In this document: positions 6,808-57,246 of the stretch, one piece after another
How the letters are laid out: each line of letters starts with the position of its first letter
Position numbering within the stretch: the stretch's first letter is position 1
Source of the DNA: Scyliorhinus canicula
Lineage: Eukaryota
Reading direction: 5' to 3'
Length of the DNA stretch: 64,000 nucleotides
Assembly: GCF_902713615.1 (NCBI RefSeq)
Contig: NC_052156.1
Location: 116,103,120 to 116,167,119, forward strand
Position numbers and translations under genes: made by a program
The notes under the pieces: model-generated
Databases searched by the model: none
Told to the model about the DNA's origin: nothing
The model's input: only the letters and a program-made list of their open reading frames with translations

Positions 6808-7173
6808 CAGGGGTGGGCAAACTTTTCCGTGCAAGGGCCACATTCAGAAATTCTCAATTCACAAGGGGCCGCATAGTATATTAAGTAAAATAATTACTTC
6901 ACCCGGTTATGCTTCTGGGCGCCTCATATAGAACATAGAACAGTACAGCACAGAACAGGCCCTTCGGCCCTCGACGTTGTGCCGAGCAATGATCACCCTA
7001 CTCAAGTCAACGTAACCCAACAGCCCCCCCCCCCCAGTAACCTTAAAAAAAATTAAAAAAAAAAAAAAATTTTTTTTAAAAATTTTTTTTTTTTTTTTTA
7101 ATGACTTGGTGGGCCGCAGAAATACCTTTGGCGGGCCGCATGCGGCCCGCGGGCCGTAGTTTGCCCACCCCTG
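6808..7173. mobile_element. hAT/Charlie-type MITE with captured SINE tail (copy 1)
   Basis: Perfect 16-bp TIR CAGGGGTGGGCAAACT. 8-bp TSD ATATAGAC (6800-6807 and 7174-7181). Subterminal GCGGGCCGCATGCGGCCCGC palindrome. Confidence 0.95.
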
Positions 7174-13445: not shown

Positions 13446-13782
13446 GGGCAGCATGGTGGCACAGTGGTTAGCACTGCTGCCTCACCGCTCCAGGGACCCG
13501 GGTTCAATTCAGGCCTCGGGTGACCTTGTGCAGTTTGCACTTTCTCCCCATGACTGCGTGGGTTTCCTCCGGGTGCTCCGGTTTCCTTCCACAGTCCAAA
13601 AATGTGAAGGTTGGGTGGGTTGGCCATGATAAATTGCCCCTTAGTGTCCAAAATGTGAGGTAGAGTTACTGGGTTACGGGGATAGGGTGGAGGTATGTGC
13701 TTAAGTAGGGTGCTCTTTCCAAGGGCCGGTGAAGACACGATGGGCCGAATGGTCTCCTTCTGCACTGTAGGGATTATATGAT
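13446..13782 (+). mobile_element. HE1-like V-SINE
   Basis: Full head, V-core and CR1-type tail. Confidence 0.92.
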
Positions 13783-21730: not shown

Positions 21731-22027
21731 AATAATAATCTTTATTGTCATAATTAGGCTTACATTAACACTGCAATGAAGTTACTGTGAAAAGTCACTA
21801 GTTTCCACATTCCGGCGCCCTTGGGTACACAGAGGGAGAATTCAGAATGTCCAAATTACCTAACAACACATCTTTTGCGATTTGTGGGAGGAAACTGGAG
21901 CACCTTGAGGAAACCCATGCAGACGCAGGGAGAACATGAAGACTCTGCACAGACAGTGATCCAAGACGGGAATCAAACCTGGGATCCTGGCGCTGTGAAG
22001 CAAAAATGCTAACCACTGTGCTACCGT
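21731..22027 (-). mobile_element. V-SINE with third tail type ending (ATT)n
   Basis: Same head and core, but tail GGCGCCGGAATGTGG...AACTTCATTGCAGTGTTAATGTAAGCCTA...AATAAAGATTATTATT. Also at 54216-54497, with fragments at 4913-5062, 20150-20205 and 24431-24468. Confidence 0.85.
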
Positions 22028-25722: not shown

Positions 25723-25846
25723 CTCTCCTTCCCCACAATCTCTGAGTGGTCACTACCAACCCCCCCCCCCCCCCAATCTAAATACAGCAAGCCGGGTAAG
25801 GCATGTAATAATATTGCGTTTCAAAATCCAAGTTACCTCCTATATT

Positions 25847-27292
25847 TGGTTCCGACTCCATCTACAAGTTTGCTGACGATACAATTATAGTGGGCCGGAT
25901 CTCGAATAATGATGAGTCAGAATACAAGAGGAAGATAGAGAACCTAGTGGAGTGGTGTAGCGACAATAATCTATCCCTCAATGCCTGCAAAACTAAAGAG
26001 CTGGTCATTGACTTCCGGAAGCAAAGTACTGTACACACCCCTGTCAGCATCAATGGGGCCGAGGTGGAGATGGATAGCAGTTTCAAATTCCTAGGGGTAC
26101 ACATCTCCAAAAATCTGTCCTGGTCCACCCACATCGGTGCTATCACAAGACAGCACAACAGCGCCTATACTTAGAACATAGAACATAGAACAGTACAGCA
26201 CAGAACAGGCCCTTCGGCCCTCGACGTTGTGCCGAGCAATGATCACCCTACTCAAGTCAACGGATCCACCCTATACCAGTAAGTAACCCAACAGCCCCCC
26301 CCATTTTTTTTTTTTAATGACTTGGTGGGCCGCATAAAGACCTTTGGCGGGCCGTAGTTTGCCCACCCCTGTTCTAGAAAGAATGCATTTTCACCACTAT
26401 AAATTAACCATTTCCACAAGGGAGAATTCGGCATAATATTTCAGCCACTAATACTTGTTTTCGCCACACAGATATCTTGCACACACAAGTTACTTTGATA
26501 CCATTAAAGTTGCTACTTGTATTTTGAGACTGGCTAATCACAATATAACACAATAATCAGACTGTTTTGAAAACATATTTCCTCAGGGGGCAAAAACGTC
26601 ACAGATAAGTATTAAAAAAAAGAATTTGACCTATTTAAGTACACGAAACAGGTCATTGTAACCTATTTGAAACAAGTTTTCAATTATTGACATTTTAAAC
26701 ATTAACTTCCTTCAGAAACTAAGGAAATTCAGCATGGCCACATTAACTATTATCAACGTTTACAGATGCAGCATAGAAAGAATCCTATCTGGCTGCATCT
26801 CAGCCTGGTATGGCAACTGCTCGGCCCAAGACCGCAAGAAACTTCAGAGAGTCGTGAACACAGCCCATTCCAGCACACGAACCGCTTCCCATCCATTGAC
26901 TCCATCTACACCTCCCGCTGCCTGGGAAAAGCGGGCAGCATAACCAAAGATCCCGCCCACCCAGCTTACTCACTCTTCCAACTTCTTCCATCGGGCAGGA
27001 GATACAAAAGTCTGAGAACATGCACAAACAGACTCAAAAACGGCTTCTTCCCCACTGTCACCAGACTCCTAAATGACCCTCTTATGCACTGACCTCATTA
27101 ATACTACACCCCTGTATGCTTCACCCATTGCCGGTGTTTATGTGGTTACATTTTGTACCTTGTGTTGCCCTATTATGTATTTTCTTTTATTCTCTTTTCT
27201 TTTCATGTACTTAATGATCTGTTGAGCTGCTCTCAGAAAAATACTTTTCGCTGTACCTCGGTACACGTAACAATAAAAAAAATCCAATCCAA
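25847..27292 (+). mobile_element. Rex1/Babar LINE, 5'-truncated, split by insertion 26172-26704
   Basis: IYKFADDT...[26 protein letters not shown]...SFKFLGVHI, resuming LRKFSM...WYGNC. (TCCAA)n tail. Near-identical to 61865-64000. Confidence 0.92.
26172..26704 (-). mobile_element. Half hAT MITE plus about 330 bp of flanking DNA inserted in Rex LINE (probable retrotransposed transduction)
   Basis: (TAGAACA)3 tail, MITE right half to TIR end 26371, then TTCTAGAA and AT-rich unique DNA. ACTT duplicated at 26169-26172 and 26705-26708. Confidence 0.75.
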
Positions 27293-29830: not shown

Positions 29831-29986
29831 TAGAACATAGAACATAGAACAGTACAGCACAGAACAGGCCCTTCGGCCCTCGATGTTGTGCCGAGCAATG
29901 ATCACCCTACTCAAACCCACGTATCCACCCTATACCCGTAACCCAACAACCCCCCTTAACCATACTTAACCCCTCCTTAACCTTAA
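29831..29986 (-). mobile_element. 5'-truncated SINE tail, (TTCTATG)n subfamily
   Basis: Matches the 3' part of the full SINE at 55537-55884 and the MITE-captured segment. Confidence 0.85.
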
Positions 29987-30216
29987 TATGTTAAAGACTT
30001 GTCGCTTAGAGTTGACACAAGGCCATGCTGAATCTGACTTAGTTAAATGAAAGAAGACCTGAGCTTCCCAGTTGGGTACTTGAGCTTCTGACTTTGTGGC
30101 GTGTCGGGTGTCTTCTGTCGAGCATGAGGAGCCACATAACGGCCTTGGTTTTCCAATTGCAACACTATTTGCAAATCACTTAAAATAAATGTGGTTACCA
30201 TCGGAATTACAATTAT

Positions 30217-34182: not shown

Positions 34183-34568
34183 CAGGGGTGGGCAAACTTT
34201 TCCGTGCAAGGGCCACATTCAGAAATTCACAATTCACAAAGGGCCGCATAGTATATTAAGTAAAATAATTACTTCACCCGGTTATGATTCTGGGCGCCTC
34301 ATATAGAACATAGAACAGTACAGCACAGAACAGGCCCTTCGGCACTCGACGTTGTGCCGTGCAATGATCACCCTACTCAAGTCAACGTATCCACCCTATA
34401 CCAGTAAGTAACCCAACAGCCCGCCCCCATTAACCTTAAAAAAAAATTTAAAAAAAAAAAAAAATTTTTAAAAAAAATTTTTTTTTTTTTTTTTAATGAC
34501 TTGGTGGGCCGCAGAAATACCTTTGGCGGGCCGCATGCGGCCCGCGGGCCGTAGTTTGCCCACCCCTG
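34183..34568. mobile_element. hAT/Charlie-type MITE with captured SINE tail (copy 2)
   Basis: Same 16-bp TIRs, perfect 8-bp TSD TTCTAGAT (34175-34182 and 34569-34576). Inserted in an RTEX-like LINE 3' end. Confidence 0.95.
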
Positions 34569-43620: not shown

Positions 43621-44919
43621 GATAGATAGATAGATAGATAGAGAAATACAGCACAGAACAGGCCCTTCGGCCCACGATGTTGCGCCGAACTTTTGTCCTA
43701 GGTTAATCATAGAATTTTGGACAATTTGTCATGGCCAATCCACCCAACCTGCACATCTTTGGACTGTGGGAGGAAACCGGAGTACCCGGAGGAAACCCAC
43801 GCAGTCACGGGGAGGATGTGCAGACTCCACACAGACAGTGACCCAAGTCGAAATCGAACTTGGGACCCTGGAGCTGTGAAGCAATTGTGCTATCCACAAT
43901 GCTACCGTGCTGCCCTTAAGAAGTTAACCTACACTCCCTTATTCTACCCTAATCCAAGTACCTATCCAATAGCCGCTTGAAGGTCCATAAATTTTCCGAC
44001 TCAACTACTACCACAGGCAGTGCATTCCATGCCCCCACTACTCTCTGGGTAAAGAACCTACCTCTGACATCCCCTCTATATCTTCCACCATTTATCTTAA
44101 ATTTATGTCCCCTTGTAATGGTGTGTTCCACCCGGGGAAAAAGTCTCTGACTGTCTACTCTATCTATTCCCCTGATCATCTTATAAACCTCTATCAAGTC
44201 GCCCCTCATCCTTCTCCGTTCTAATGAGAAAAGGCCTAGCACCCTCAACCTTTCCTCATATGACCTACTCTCCATTCCAGGCAACATCCTGGTAAATCTC
44301 CTTTGCACCTTTTCCAAAGCTTCCACATCCTTCCTAAAATGAGGTGACCAGAACTGCACACAGTACTCCAAATGTGGCCTGACCAAGGTTTTGTACAGCT
44401 GCATCATCACCTCACGGCTCTTAAATTCAATCCCTCTGCTAATGAACGCTAGCACACCATAGGCCTTCTTCACAGCTCTATCCACTTGAGTGGCAACTTT
44501 CAAAGAACAATGAACATAGACCCCAAGATCTCTCTGCTCCTCCACATTGCCAAGAACCCTACCATTAACCCTGTATTCCGCATTCAGATTTGTCCTTCCA
44601 AAATGGACAACCTCACACTTGTCAGGGTTAAACTCCATCTGCCACTTCTCAGCCCAGCTCTGCATTCTATCTATGTCTCTTTGAAGCCGACAACAGCCCT
44701 CCTCACTATCCACAACTCCACCAATCTTCGTATCATCTGCAAATTTACTGACCCACCCTTCAACTCCCTCATCCAAGTCGTTAATGAAAATCACAAACAG
44801 CAGAGGACCCAGAACTGATCCCTGCGGTACGCCACTGATAACTGGGCTCCAGGCTGAATATTTGCCATCCACCACAACTCTCTGTCTTCTATCGGTTAGC
44901 CAGTTTGTTATCCAACTGG
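43621..44919 (-). mobile_element. Young 5'-truncated CR1 LINE with a SINE in its 3' UTR
   Basis: Uninterrupted ORF, (CTAT)n tail, possible GGATA duplication (43616-43620 and 44918-44922). SINE at 43707-43915. Confidence 0.93.
43949..44875 (-). CDS. CR1 ORF2 reverse transcriptase C-terminal part (TE-encoded, 5'-truncated)
   Basis: 308 aa open frame with GVPQGSVLGP, KFADDTK, RDLGV and RPHLEYCVQFWSP. Confidence 0.9.
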   Translation of the reverse strand: MVDGKYSAWSPVISGVPQGSVLGPLLFVIFINDLDEGVEGWVSKFADDTKIGGVVDSEEGCCRLQRDIDRMQSWAEKWQMEFNPDKCEVVHFGRTNLNAEYRVNGRVLGNVEEQRDLGVYVHCSLKVATQVDRAVKKAYGVLAFISRGIEFKSREVMMQLYKTLVRPHLEYCVQFWSPHFRKDVEALEKVQRRFTRMLPGMESRSYEERLRVLGLFSLERRRMRGDLIEVYKMIRGIDRVDSQRLFPRVEHTITRGHKFKINGGRYRGDVRGRFFTQRVVGAWNALPVVVVESENLWTFKRLLDRYLD

Positions 44920-49296: not shown

Positions 49297-49615
49297 AAGG
49301 CACGGTGTCATAGTGCCAGGGACCCAGGTTCGATTACGACTTTGGGTGACTGGCTGTGTAGAGTTTGCCCATTCTCCCCATGTCTGCGTGGGTTTCCTCC
49401 GGGTGCACCAGTTTCCTTCCACTGTCCAAAGATGTGCAGGTTAGGTGGATTGGCCATGCTAAAATTGCCTCTTAGTGCCCAAGGTTGTGCAGGTTAGATG
49501 GGGATACGGGATAGGACCTGGGAGTGAGCCTAGGTAGGATGCTCTTTCAGAGGGTTGTTGCAGACACAATGGGCTAAATGGCCTCCTTCTGCATTGTCAG
49601 GATTCAAGGATTCTA
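49297..49615 (+). mobile_element. HE1-like V-SINE
   Basis: Partly deleted head, V-core and CR1-type tail. Confidence 0.85.
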
Positions 49616-54497: not shown

Positions 54498-55536
54498 CTT
54501 CTCTACCTTCATAAAATGAGAGCATTTACGAGTCAACCACTAGCTTGTTGTGAGTCTGGAATTACATATAGGCCAATCCAGGTAAGAGTTCAATCCCTAA
54601 AGGACATTACTGAACCAGGTGGGTATTTACAACATTTCATCGGCATCATTAGACATTTAATTCCAGATTTTTATTGAATTCAAATTTCAGTGGCCAGATT
54701 TGAACTTGGTTTCCACGGAGCATTACCCTGGATCTTAATCGCAACTACTTTGAAGAAGAAAAAGAGGTTGGGGTGGTGACAAAGGTTATTCGTACATTCA
54801 TTGTTTTGAAGAGGTTATAATGAACCTAATGGTCATGCATTGCTTAATGGCTCTGCCAGCGGGGGAGGGGGGGGGGGGAGGGGGGGGGGAGATCTCACCG
54901 GTGGAAAGAGATGGAAAATCCCACCCATTGCTGCCCAGATCCATGTCAATAACTTAACTTTGTATGCAACCTGGTCTCCCAAACATCACAGACATCAACA
55001 TGATAAGTTTGAGGGATAAGTATTACCCAGGAAGATTGACACATTTGGTGGCTCCCACTCAAGGTTGGTTTTTTCGGCCCTTCCCCAGTGGTATAGGCGT
55101 TTTTTTTTTTTAGGGCAAAAATGAGTGAGTGCCCAGGGAAGGTAAAACCCCTCTGGTGAATCTGGTATATGGATCAGAGGATGAGAAGTGCCATGAGAAA
55201 GAGAGAGCTGCATGAGCAAGAAAGTTTTCGTGGTGCGCCACAGGTGAAGATGGTGGAGGGGAAGGGGGCCAGTGCTGTCCGCCTAGTGGGTCGATGGAAC
55301 AGCTGGGGGAGTTTTTGTACGGCAAATTCCAACAGCAGAGGAAAGAGGCTTTGGAGGATTTGGCTAAGTTGGTGCTACTGCTCAGAGCTGCGATTGAGCG
55401 TGTGGAGCAGAGGCAGGAGGTTCAGGGCTTGATGATCCAGGAGGTGGTGGGGGAGCATAAGGAGCGGATGGCCTCGCTGGAGACAGAGTTGGGGATAGTG
55501 CTACACAGCCAGAAGAGGTTACGAGAGAAATTGGAG

Positions 55537-55884
55537 GACATAGAACATAGAACAGTACAGCACAGAACAGGCCCTTTGGCCCTCAATGTTGTGCCGAGCC
55601 ATGATCACCCTACTCAAACCCACGTATCCACCCTATACCCGTAACCCAACAACCCCCCCTTAACCTTACTTTTATTAGGACACTACGGGCAATTTAGCAT
55701 GGCCAATCCACCTCACCCGCACATCTTTGGACTGTGGGAGGAAACCGGAGCACCCGGAGGAAACCCACGCACACAGGGGGAGGACGTGCTGACTCCACAC
55801 AGACAGTGACCCAGCCGGGAATCGAACCTGGGACCCTGGAGCTGTGAAGCATTTATGCTAACCACCATGCTACCCTGCTGACCC
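55537..55884 (-). mobile_element. Full-length young V-SINE with (TTCTATG)n tail
   Basis: tRNA head at the right end, V-core, and tail GGGCCTGTTCTGTGCTGTACTG(TTCTATG)n. Source family of the MITE-captured segment. Confidence 0.93.
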
Positions 55885-57246
55885 AAAGGCCTGCTGCCTC
55901 AAGGACCTTGAGAACCACTCCAGGAGACAGAAAAGGAGAATCTTCGGGATGCCTGAGGGCAGTGAGGGAGCCCATCAGCTGAGGAAGCAAGCAGTAGTGA
56001 GGGAGACAGGTCATGTGAGAGACAAGAGAGGCAATCTGGTGACAGACCCGGAGGGGGTGAATGGGGCTTTTGAGGCCTTGCATAGCAGTCTGTACGAGTT
56101 GGAACCCCAGACAGGTGAGGAGGAGATGCGGCGGTTTCTAGATGGGTTGGAGTTTCCCAAGGTGGAGGAGAGGTGGCTCAGGGGCTGGGAGCCCCAACTG
56201 GATTGAAGGAGGTGATGAATGGCATGGGGGTGATGCAGTCAGGTAAGGCTCCGGGGCAGGATGGGTTCCCAGTAGAGTTTTATGATAAGTCTGGAGTGGA
56301 GCTGGGGCCACTGCTGGTGAGGACGTCAAATGAGGCCACTGCCGAAGGCTTCCATCTCCCTGATTTTAAAGAAGAATAAGGACCCGGAGCAGTGTGGATC
56401 GTACCGTCCGATATCGCTGCTGAATGTTGATGCGCTTGCATCACAAATTGAGTGTGCCGGAGGTGATAGGGGAGGACCAGGCAGGTGTTGTGAAGGGAAG
56501 GCAGTTGTCAGCGAATATGCGGAGGTTACTTAATGTGATTATATGATATCGTCGGTGGGGCAGGAGTTGGAGGTAGCGGTGGCGATGGAAGCGGAGAAAT
56601 CTTTTGGTCGATGGAGTGGGTGCATATGTTTGAAGTTCTGGGGCGGTTTGGGTTCAGGCAGGGTTTTGTGAATTGGGTCTGGCTGTTGTACAAGGAGTCA
56701 GTGGCGAGTGTGCAGATGAAACAGGTATGTTTAGGCGACATTGGCCTACACTATCAGACGAGACAGGGGTGCCTCTCTCCCTGTTACTTTTCACCTTGCA
56801 GATCAGGCCATTGGCAATGGTGCTTAGGGGGTCGAGGCCTTGGAGAGGGATTGAGGGTGGGGGAGGGTTGCCGAGCATATGGTTTTACTACATACAAATT
56901 ATTTTTTATTATATATTTCAGACCCAATGGGCAGCATTGGAGGAATTATGGATATTTTAGGGGAATTTTGTGGGTTTCAGGATATAAATTGAACATGGGA
57001 AAGAGTGAGGTGTTCCCAGTCAATGCCAGAGGGCAAGAATGGAAATTTAGGGGGGTTGCCGTTTAGGGTGGAGGGGAGGAGCTTTAGGTACTTAGGCATC
57101 CAGATGGCACAGAGGTGGGCCCAGTTGCATAGATTAAACATGATTCGATTGGTGAAGGGAAGCAAGGAGAATTTTAAAAGATGGGATGTGTTGCCGCTGT
57201 CACTGGCTGGGTGTGTGTAAACAGTGAAAATGATGATGCAGCCCAG

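What the first reader, a model, noticed from the sequence alone, without database searches (positions are those of the whole stretch)
26169..26708. Dual-mode mobile element: a hAT MITE that also appears to retrotranspose and carry 5' flanking DNA
Seen: two complete MITE copies (6808-7173, 34183-34568) have TIRs and 8-bp TSDs. This third copy has no left half. It ends exactly at the embedded SINE tail, with 3 TAGAACA units versus 2 in both complete copies. It keeps the right TIR, then a hAT-type target site TTCTAGAA with no partner, then about 330 bp of unrelated AT-rich DNA. The whole block splits a Rex LINE cleanly (CTATACTT|...|ACTTCC, ACTT duplicated). It also lacks 18 nt across the GCGGGCCGCATGCGGCCCGC hairpin and lacks the A-runs. 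Established: CR1/L2-group RTs recognise their 3' tails in trans, vary the tail-repeat number by slippage, and leave short TSDs. Inference: a minus-strand transcript from another locus ran from flank through the TIR to the embedded tail and was inserted by target-primed reverse transcription. Each MITE copy would then be a portable retrotransposition signal able to transduce host sequence, linking class II and class I mobility.
Basis: partly seen in the sequence, partly recalled or inferred. Interest (0 to 1): 0.78.

Follow-up and report, generated by a model that had tools for sequence, protein, structure and literature searches.

The report
Half transposon retrocopied via embedded SINE tail
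A 532-base block in a catshark LINE fragment looks like a reverse-transcribed copy of a transcript, started at a SINE tail lodged inside a cut-and-paste transposon; it is a neat single event that follows from known retrotransposon biology, not proof of a two-mode element.

Summary
Two complete hAT MITEs (6808-7173, 34183-34568) carry the 3' ~130 bp of a SINE in reverse orientation. The third copy has only the SINE piece and the right arm.

- **Insert limits:** it starts exactly at the SINE tail, with 3 TAGAACA units against 2. It keeps the right TIR, then TTCTAGAA and 325 bp of unique AT-rich DNA.
- **Clean insertion:** two paralogous LINE copies in the window show that the 532-bp block (26173-26704) splits its host LINE cleanly, with ACTT duplicated.
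- **Target site:** in 121 related hAT ends from metagenome contigs, the 8 bp after the TIR have the consensus nTCTAGAn, and TTCTAGAA is the commonest octamer. The AT-rich DNA is therefore most likely the genomic flank of a donor MITE.

Best reading (about 0.68): a one-off retrocopy of a Pol II co-transcript, primed by a CR1-type reverse transcriptase at the embedded tail.

The donor locus could not be searched, because no tool holds this genome. Only one such copy is visible. The signal is the SINE tail; the MITE is its carrier. "Dual-mode element" is therefore untested.

Unchecked earlier scan notes on other DNA of this genome report the same MITE family (s1-249350) and a similar SINE-tail-primed retrocopy (s1-253625).

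The parts
26169..26172 (.). Left copy of the 4-bp target duplication ACTT (LINE sequence); T26172 could equally be the first base of a third full tail unit
   Evidence: the empty site in two paralogous LINE copies reads CTATACTTCCTC.
26173..26192 (-). Tail microsatellite. On the minus strand the insert ends ...TGTTCTA TGTTCTA TGTTCT-3', about 3 units; both complete MITEs have 2
26197..26233 (-). Predicted stem-loop (6 bp plus 5 bp, GAAG loop) just upstream of the tail, as in CR1/L2-type 3' ends
   Evidence: consensus fold of 5 copies. All pairs are invariant, so there is no covariation support.
26173..26303 (-). 3' ~130 bp of the SINE, MITE-borne variant (CAAGTCAACG and an extra AGTA, both shared with MITE1/MITE2 and absent from free SINE copies)
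   Evidence: 119/123 identical to MITE2, against 112/119 and 109/119 to the free copies.
26304..26371 (-). T13 run and the MITE right arm, ending in the right TIR GTTTGCCCACCCCTG; an 18-nt deletion between the GCGGGCCG direct repeats lies near 26354
26372..26379 (.). TTCTAGAA, an unpaired octamer that fits the hAT target site of this TIR family
   Evidence: T at position 4 in 113/121 and A at position 5 in 112/121; consensus nTCTAGAn; TTCTAGAA is the commonest octamer; 60/121 ends have a partner TIR and a matching 8-bp TSD.
26380..26704 (-). 325 bp of unique AT-rich DNA, read as the transduced 5' flank from the donor locus; it holds a T8 run in the minus sense (26612-26619), which argues against a Pol III template
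   Evidence: no Rfam match.
26705..26708 (.). Right copy of the 4-bp target duplication ACTT
25846..26168 (+). Host LINE fragment, left of the insertion (C-terminal end of the RT region)
   Evidence: RVT_1 E=0.0011, below the curated cut-off.
26709..27285 (+). Host LINE fragment, right of the insertion, up to its own 3' end (A8 TCCAATCCAAAT); this tail is unlike the SINE's, so this LINE is not the partner
6808..7173 (.). Complete composite hAT MITE 1, TSD ATATAGAC, embedded SINE piece 6928 to about 7040 with 2 tail units
34183..34568 (.). Complete composite hAT MITE 2, TSD TTCTAGAT, embedded SINE piece 34303 to about 34438 with 2 tail units
29831..29989 (-). Free, 5'-truncated SINE copy with 3 tail units; possible 4-bp ATAT duplication
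55535..55885 (-). Free full-length SINE copy (B-box GGTTCGATTCC in the head) with 2 tail units

Best explanation
The 532-bp block 26173-26704 is a single retrocopy. At another locus a composite hAT MITE, which carries the 3' end of a SINE in antisense orientation, sat at a TTCTAGAA target site. An RNA polymerase II transcript crossed about 325 bp of flank, the target site and the MITE's right TIR and arm, and reached the embedded SINE 3' domain (hairpin plus TTCTATG-type microsatellite). A CR1-type LINE reverse transcriptase bound that domain in trans. It nicked the plus strand of an old LINE copy after CTATACTT and primed on the tail repeats, with slippage or a 3-unit donor giving 3 units. 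It then copied the RNA back to its 5' end or to a truncation point, and second-strand cleavage 4 bp away produced the ACTT duplication. Shown here: the anatomy, the clean split, the duplication, the MITE origin of the SINE piece, and the target-site character of TTCTAGAA. Inferred: the RNA intermediate, initiation inside the RNA, the identity of the enzyme, and the existence of the donor.
For: - **Clean insertion.** The empty-site sequence from two paralogous LINE copies shows a clean insertion with ACTT duplicated.
- **End at the tail.** The left end coincides with the end of the SINE microsatellite. About 7 of roughly 380 possible breakpoints in the MITE would look like this.
- **Tail length varies.** Free copies of the same SINE end at the same motif with 2 or 3 units.
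- **MITE origin.** The SINE piece shares MITE-specific changes and is followed by the same T-run and right arm as in MITE1 and MITE2. The template was therefore MITE-bearing, not a free SINE.
- **Genuine hAT insertion site.** The TIR lies inside the insert and is followed by TTCTAGAA. Among 121 related ends this is the commonest post-TIR octamer and fits their consensus nTCTAGAn. 60 of those ends have a confirmed 8-bp TSD.
- **Tail architecture.** A hairpin is predicted a few nt upstream of the repeats. The 7-mer TTCTATG is the CR1 octamer ATTCTRTG minus one base (PMC8665684).
- **Precedent.** For the L2 element UnaL2 the 3' tail is the only cis element needed, works in trans, and the repeats undergo template slippage (PMC1636434).
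- **Not Pol III.** A T8 run in the minus sense of the flank argues against a Pol III unit.
Against: - No donor locus has been seen. No tool here holds this genome.
- There is only one such copy in 64 kb.
- In complete MITEs the tail is followed by about 120 nt of left arm in the RNA sense. Reverse transcription would have to start internally, or the donor RNA would have to end there.
- No LINE sharing this 3' end is present in the window.
- The hairpin has no covariation support.
- A 4-bp duplication is short.
- Nothing shows that the flank is transcribed.
Confidence: 0.68

Rival explanations
1. DNA-level patch. A double-strand break in the LINE was repaired by copying a stretch from an ectopic locus (synthesis-dependent or microhomology-mediated templated insertion), and the copied stretch happened to start at the SINE tail.
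For: Templated filler insertions of a few hundred bp are a known repair outcome (own knowledge). The block is contiguous genomic DNA crossing a MITE boundary, which any copying mechanism would give. One base (T26172) is shared between target and tail.
Against: It does not explain why one end falls exactly at the retrotransposition tail, which has roughly a 2% chance. It also does not explain the extra tail unit or the 4-bp target duplication.
Confidence: 0.12
2. The block is one copy of an established composite retroposon family. Its body is AT-rich head + TTCTAGAA + MITE right arm + SINE 3' domain, and it amplified many times from one master locus. The AT-rich part is then family sequence, not a one-off transduction.
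For: The same anatomy fits. New SINE-like families are known to arise when a LINE-type tail is joined to new 5' sequence (review PMC3747384).
Against: There is no second copy of 26380-26704 in the window. There is no Pol III-type head, and a T8 terminator lies in the RNA sense. There is no Rfam match.
Confidence: 0.1
3. Nested insertions followed by deletion. An AT-rich element inserted into the LINE, a MITE inserted into it at TTCTAGAA, and a later deletion removed the MITE's left half together with the left part of the AT-rich element.
For: Nested transposons and internal deletions are common in this window. One example is the 18-nt and roughly 20-nt internal deletions among the MITE copies.
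Against: The deletion would need one breakpoint exactly at the LINE/insert junction and the other exactly at the end of the SINE microsatellite, while leaving a perfect ACTT duplication. No other copy of the supposed AT-rich element was found.
Confidence: 0.06

Closest known systems
Trans-mobilisation through a shared LINE/SINE 3' tail (eel UnaL2/UnaSINE; stringent-type LINEs)
   Same: A 3' stem-loop plus a short tandem repeat is the only cis requirement. Any RNA carrying it is mobilised in trans, and the repeat number changes by template slippage (PMC1636434).
   Different: That system belongs to the L2 clade, has a 5-mer repeat and was shown by assay. Here there is a CR1-like 7-mer, a natural event, and a tail that lies inside a DNA transposon and probably inside the RNA.
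CR1 3' end (hairpin plus ATTCTRTG microsatellite) and CR1-mobilised SINEs
   Same: A hairpin is predicted just upstream of a TTCTATG repeat, and the copy number varies between insertions (PMC8665684).
   Different: The unit is a 7-mer rather than an 8-mer. No partner LINE was seen in the window.
Retro-DNAs of primates (Tang and Liang, PMC11195612)
   Same: DNA-transposon sequence without its TIR pair, inserted with the hallmarks of target-primed reverse transcription.
   Different: Those use L1, with poly(A) tails, long TSDs and TT/AAAA sites. Here there is no poly(A), the duplication is 4 bp, and priming is at a sequence-specific tail that a SINE had placed inside the MITE.
5' transduction by L1 and SVA (own knowledge)
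   Same: Upstream flank is co-transcribed with the element and carried to the new site.
   Different: There the transcript ends at the element's own poly(A). Here the carried unit is flank plus half a MITE, and the tail belongs to a truncated SINE.
Earlier scan note s1-253625 (same genome, other DNA; unchecked)
   Same: A block of host transcript reported to end exactly at a SINE's CR1-type tail.
   Different: The carrier there is an ordinary SINE copy in a gene, not a MITE. I did not check it.

Membership tests
hAT MITE (the two complete copies and the source of the half copy) | Terminal inverted repeats | tested here: met
   A perfect 15-nt pair, CAGGGGTGGGCAAAC / GTTTGCCCACCCCTG, in both complete copies. 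The half copy has the right one only.
hAT MITE (the two complete copies and the source of the half copy) | 8-bp target site duplication | tested here: met
   ATATAGAC and TTCTAGAT flank the two copies. 60 of 121 related ends in metagenome contigs have a partner TIR and a matching 8-mer.
hAT MITE (the two complete copies and the source of the half copy) | Target consensus of nTnnnnAn type | tested here: met
   The measured consensus is nTCTAGAn, with a central TA in about 93%. All three octamers in the window fit it.
hAT MITE (the two complete copies and the source of the half copy) | Autonomous hAT transposase partner with the same ends | not tested
   None was looked for.
CR1-type (stringent) retroposon 3' tail | Terminal microsatellite related to ATTCTRTG, with a variable number of units | tested here: met
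   TTCTATG units: 2 in MITE1, MITE2 and the free copy at 55535; 3 in the half copy and the free copy at 29831.
CR1-type (stringent) retroposon 3' tail | Hairpin directly upstream of the microsatellite | tested here: inconclusive
   Predicted in all 5 copies, but every pair is invariant, so there is no covariation.
CR1-type (stringent) retroposon 3' tail | Autonomous LINE sharing the same 3' end | tested here: inconclusive
   None is present in this 64-kb window. The host LINE has a different tail. The genome could not be searched.
Target-primed retrocopy | Precise insertion relative to an empty site, with a short target duplication | tested here: met
   Two paralogous empty sites; ACTT is duplicated.
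Target-primed retrocopy | 3' end at the sequence recognised by the reverse transcriptase | tested here: met
   The insert ends in the SINE microsatellite.
Target-primed retrocopy | Donor locus holding the same sequence contiguously | not testable with these tools
   No match in the window. Protein-route and metagenome look-ups were blank, and those collections do not hold this genome.
Retro-DNA in the sense of PMC11195612 | Poly(A) tail and L1-type insertion site | tested here: not met
   There is no A-tail at either end, and the target is CTATACTT|CC. It works like a retro-DNA but is not an L1-made one.
   There is one half copy among three MITE-derived loci in the window. A genome-wide census was not possible.

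The most novel reading that the evidence does not exclude
The composite MITE family acts as a dispersed set of entry sites for a CR1-type reverse transcriptase. Because cut-and-paste spread has placed intact SINE tails at many transcribed sites, half-MITE-plus-flank retrocopies arise again and again. A DNA transposon would then be systematically seeding retro-transduction of host sequence in a genome whose LINEs otherwise make few retrocopies.
Probability: 0.25. Interest if true: 0.62.

Novelty: new variant of a known kind. Interest (0 to 1): 0.42.

Why it matters
Sequence-specific ("stringent") LINEs are thought to make few retrocopies of host RNA, because they need their own 3' tail. If SINE tails embedded in other repeats or in transcripts can serve as start sites inside the RNA, then host and transposon sequence can be duplicated without poly(A). 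A MITE that carries such a tail would multiply those start sites by a second route. This single locus is a clean natural example of the first step. It does not show that the process is frequent, or that the MITE gains anything from it.

Tried and rejected
- **Donor search inside the window:** no second copy of 26372-26704.
- **Earlier scan notes searched by sequence:** blank.
- **Exact look-up of a 60-aa ORF spanning flank, TIR and SINE piece (26255-26434, minus):** not on record. The word search with the same ORF found no candidates.
- **Exact look-up of a 108-aa ORF in the LINE just right of the insert:** tried to find other assemblies of this locus and possible empty alleles; not on record.
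- **Metagenome scan with a 29-mer of the flank:** no match, as expected, because that collection does not hold shark genomes.
- **Rfam:** nothing on the whole window at gathering scores, and nothing on 26100-26800 at E<=1.
- **ARAGORN:** finds no tRNA in the window. The tRNA origin of the SINE head therefore rests only on a visible B-box.
- **Paralogous empty sites for the two free SINE copies:** none found, so their duplication lengths stay uncertain.
- **The 18-nt hairpin deletion in ordinary cut-and-paste relatives:** the relatives are too varied upstream of the shared 23-mer to say whether it recurs.
- **Rejected readings:**
  - One-ended or aberrant hAT transposition, because the TIR lies inside the insert.
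  - L1-type priming, because there is no A-tail.
  - An assembly artefact, because the split is clean and carries a duplication.

Full report
**1. What is in the sequence**

The window holds two complete copies of one short transposon.
- MITE1 is 6808-7173, flanked by ATATAGAC on both sides.
- MITE2 is 34183-34568, flanked by TTCTAGAT on both sides.
- Both have perfect 15-nt inverted ends, CAGGGGTGGGCAAAC / GTTTGCCCACCCCTG.

Their middle is not transposon sequence. It is the last ~130 bp of a SINE in reverse orientation.
- A full copy of that SINE lies at 55535-55885 on the minus strand. Its head has a consensus B-box, GGTTCGATTCC.
- A 5'-truncated free copy lies at 29831-29989.
- About twenty further copies of the SINE head, with other tails, are scattered through the window.
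- Read on the minus strand, the SINE ends in TGTTCTA repeats. The full free copy has 2 units and the truncated one has 3.

**2. The third copy**

ACTT at 26169-26172 and ACTT at 26705-26708 bracket a 532-bp insert, 26173-26704. Two other copies of the same LINE in the window, at about 62.45 kb and 40.85 kb on the minus strand, read CGCCTATACTTCCTCAGG without interruption. The host LINE is therefore split cleanly and four bases are duplicated. By chance such an overlap would occur about once in 256.

The insert contains, in order:
- the SINE tail with 3 units, where both MITEs have 2;
- the SINE piece;
- a T13 run;
- the MITE right arm and right TIR, ending at 26371;
- TTCTAGAA (26372-26379);
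- 325 bp of unique DNA at 31.7% GC, among the lowest 1.3% of windows of that size here.

There is no left arm anywhere nearby.

The SINE piece carries the changes that mark the MITE-borne version: CAAGTCAACG instead of CAAACCCACG, and an extra AGTA. It is closer to MITE2 (119/123) than to the free copies (112/119 and 109/119). The template therefore was a MITE, not a free SINE.

- The 18-nt gap is real. It lies between two 8-nt direct repeats, GCGGGCCG, and removes half of a 20-nt palindrome.
- The long A/T runs of the complete copies are absent.

Either feature could come from replication slippage at the donor or from a jump of the reverse transcriptase. One copy cannot tell these apart.

**3. 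Is TTCTAGAA a real hAT target site?**

This could be tested independently.
- The contigs share nothing with the window except the MITE arms. MITE2 positions 1-75 and 324-386 are covered; 81-300 are never covered and 301-320 by only two relatives.
- They are therefore related hAT MITEs in other, unidentified hosts, without the SINE piece. None looked human.
- In 121 such ends, the 8 bp after the TIR have T at position 4 in 113 cases and A at position 5 in 112.
- The overall consensus is nTCTAGAn, and TTCTAGAA is the single commonest octamer.
- In 60 of the 121 ends, a partner TIR with the same 8-mer lies 200-750 bp away, most often about 330 bp.

The octamer next to the half copy is therefore what this transposon family leaves at a genuine insertion. 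It follows that 26380-26704 is, with high likelihood, genomic DNA that lay beside a MITE at another locus.

**4. Mechanism**

The simplest account of all these facts is one target-primed reverse transcription event.
- A minus-sense transcript crossed flank, target site, TIR and right arm, and reached the embedded SINE 3' domain.
- The transcript was probably made by polymerase II, because the flank holds a T8 run in that sense.
- The SINE 3' domain has the architecture of a CR1/L2-type tail. A stem-loop is predicted at 26197-26233, a few bases upstream of the repeats. All its pairs are invariant, so there is no covariation support.
- The unit TTCTATG is the CR1 octamer ATTCTRTG less one base (PMC8665684).
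- For the eel L2 element UnaL2, the tail is the only cis element needed. It works in trans, and the repeats undergo template slippage (PMC1636434).
- The plus strand was nicked after CTATACTT, cDNA began on the repeats, and a staggered second cut gave ACTT.

The steps divide as follows.
- **Shown:** the anatomy.
- **Inferred:** the RNA intermediate, the enzyme, and the start of reverse transcription inside the RNA.

That last inference is needed because in complete MITEs the tail is followed by the ~120-nt left arm. From memory, UnaL2 and R2 can start at their tail even when extra sequence follows it. I could not confirm this in the papers I read.

**5. Rivals**

| Rival | Main weakness | Odds |
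|---|---|---|
| Repair patch copied from another locus | Leaves unexplained the end at the tail, the extra tail unit and the duplication | 0.12 |
| Established composite retroposon family | No second copy here, no Pol III head, no Rfam match | 0.10 |
| Nested insertions followed by a deletion | Needs two breakpoints to fall exactly on meaningful boundaries | 0.06 |

**6. What could not be done**

The decisive test is to find the donor locus and count half copies across the genome. It was out of reach, because no tool holds this genome.
- Exact and word-based protein look-ups with ORFs from the region were blank.
- A 29-mer of the flank is absent from metagenome contigs.

**7. Comparison with what is known**

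- DNA-transposon sequence copied by retrotransposition has been described in primates as 'retro-DNAs' made by L1, with poly(A) tails (PMC11195612). This case lacks poly(A) and an L1-type site. It resembles that class in outcome, not in machinery.
- The rule that a LINE tail suffices for mobilisation in trans is established.
- Reviews list shark V-SINEs (HE1) with a CR1-like partner, HER1. I could not compare sequences.
- Unchecked earlier notes of this scan call the genome a catshark. They record the same SINE-capturing MITE family on another piece (s1-249350). They also record a block of HORMAD1 transcript ending at a SINE's CR1-type tail (s1-253625).
- If that last note holds, embedded SINE tails in general act this way in this genome, and not MITEs in particular.

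**8. Verdict**

The retrocopy reading of this one block is well supported, at about 0.68. The wider claim of a dual-mode element that routinely transduces host DNA is untested and rests on one event. The active signal is the SINE tail, and the MITE is its carrier. I rate it a new variant of a known kind, of moderate interest.

Noticed in passing
L001-L120 (metagenome contigs), e.g. L026:1083-1414, L031:587-920: At least 120 JGI metagenome contigs from several projects hold hAT MITEs of about 310-360 bp. They share both arms of the catshark MITE (MITE2 positions 1-75 and 324-386), including an exact 23-mer at the end, and have 8-bp TSDs with a central TA. They share nothing else with the window, so they come from other, unidentified eukaryotic hosts. 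This TIR family is far more widely spread than one shark genome.
   Followed up: partly
window 6928-7100 and 34303-34495: Between the SINE piece and the right arm, both complete MITEs carry 75-80 bp of alternating A and T runs that the half copy lacks (T13 only). MITE1 also lacks about 20 bp (TCCACCCTATACCAGTAAGTA) that are present in MITE2 and in the half copy.
   Followed up: partly
window 62790-61975 and 41135-40356 (minus strand): Two further copies of the host LINE, 86-94% identical to the interrupted one. The copy at about 40.9 kb has its own ~28-bp deletion just left of the site. The family's 3' end at 27285 reads AATAAAAAAAATCCAATCCAAAT, unlike the SINE tail.
   Followed up: partly
window 43630-43915 (minus strand): A SINE of the same head family whose 3' domain is related (86% over 59 nt) but ends in (TATC)n, seen as (GATA)n on the plus strand, instead of TTCTATG units. 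This could be a different tail subfamily, or a microsatellite that grew at the end.
   Followed up: no
window 55400-55534 and 55886-56000: By eye, the DNA on both sides of the full-length SINE copy reads like decayed coding sequence of another retroelement. No target duplication could be recognised.
   Followed up: no
window, about 20 sites (e.g. 13446-13715, 49308-49480, 21839-22025): Roughly twenty diverged copies (70-88% identity) of the SINE head and core, so this SINE superfamily makes up a visible share of the window. ARAGORN recognises none of them as tRNA.
   Followed up: no
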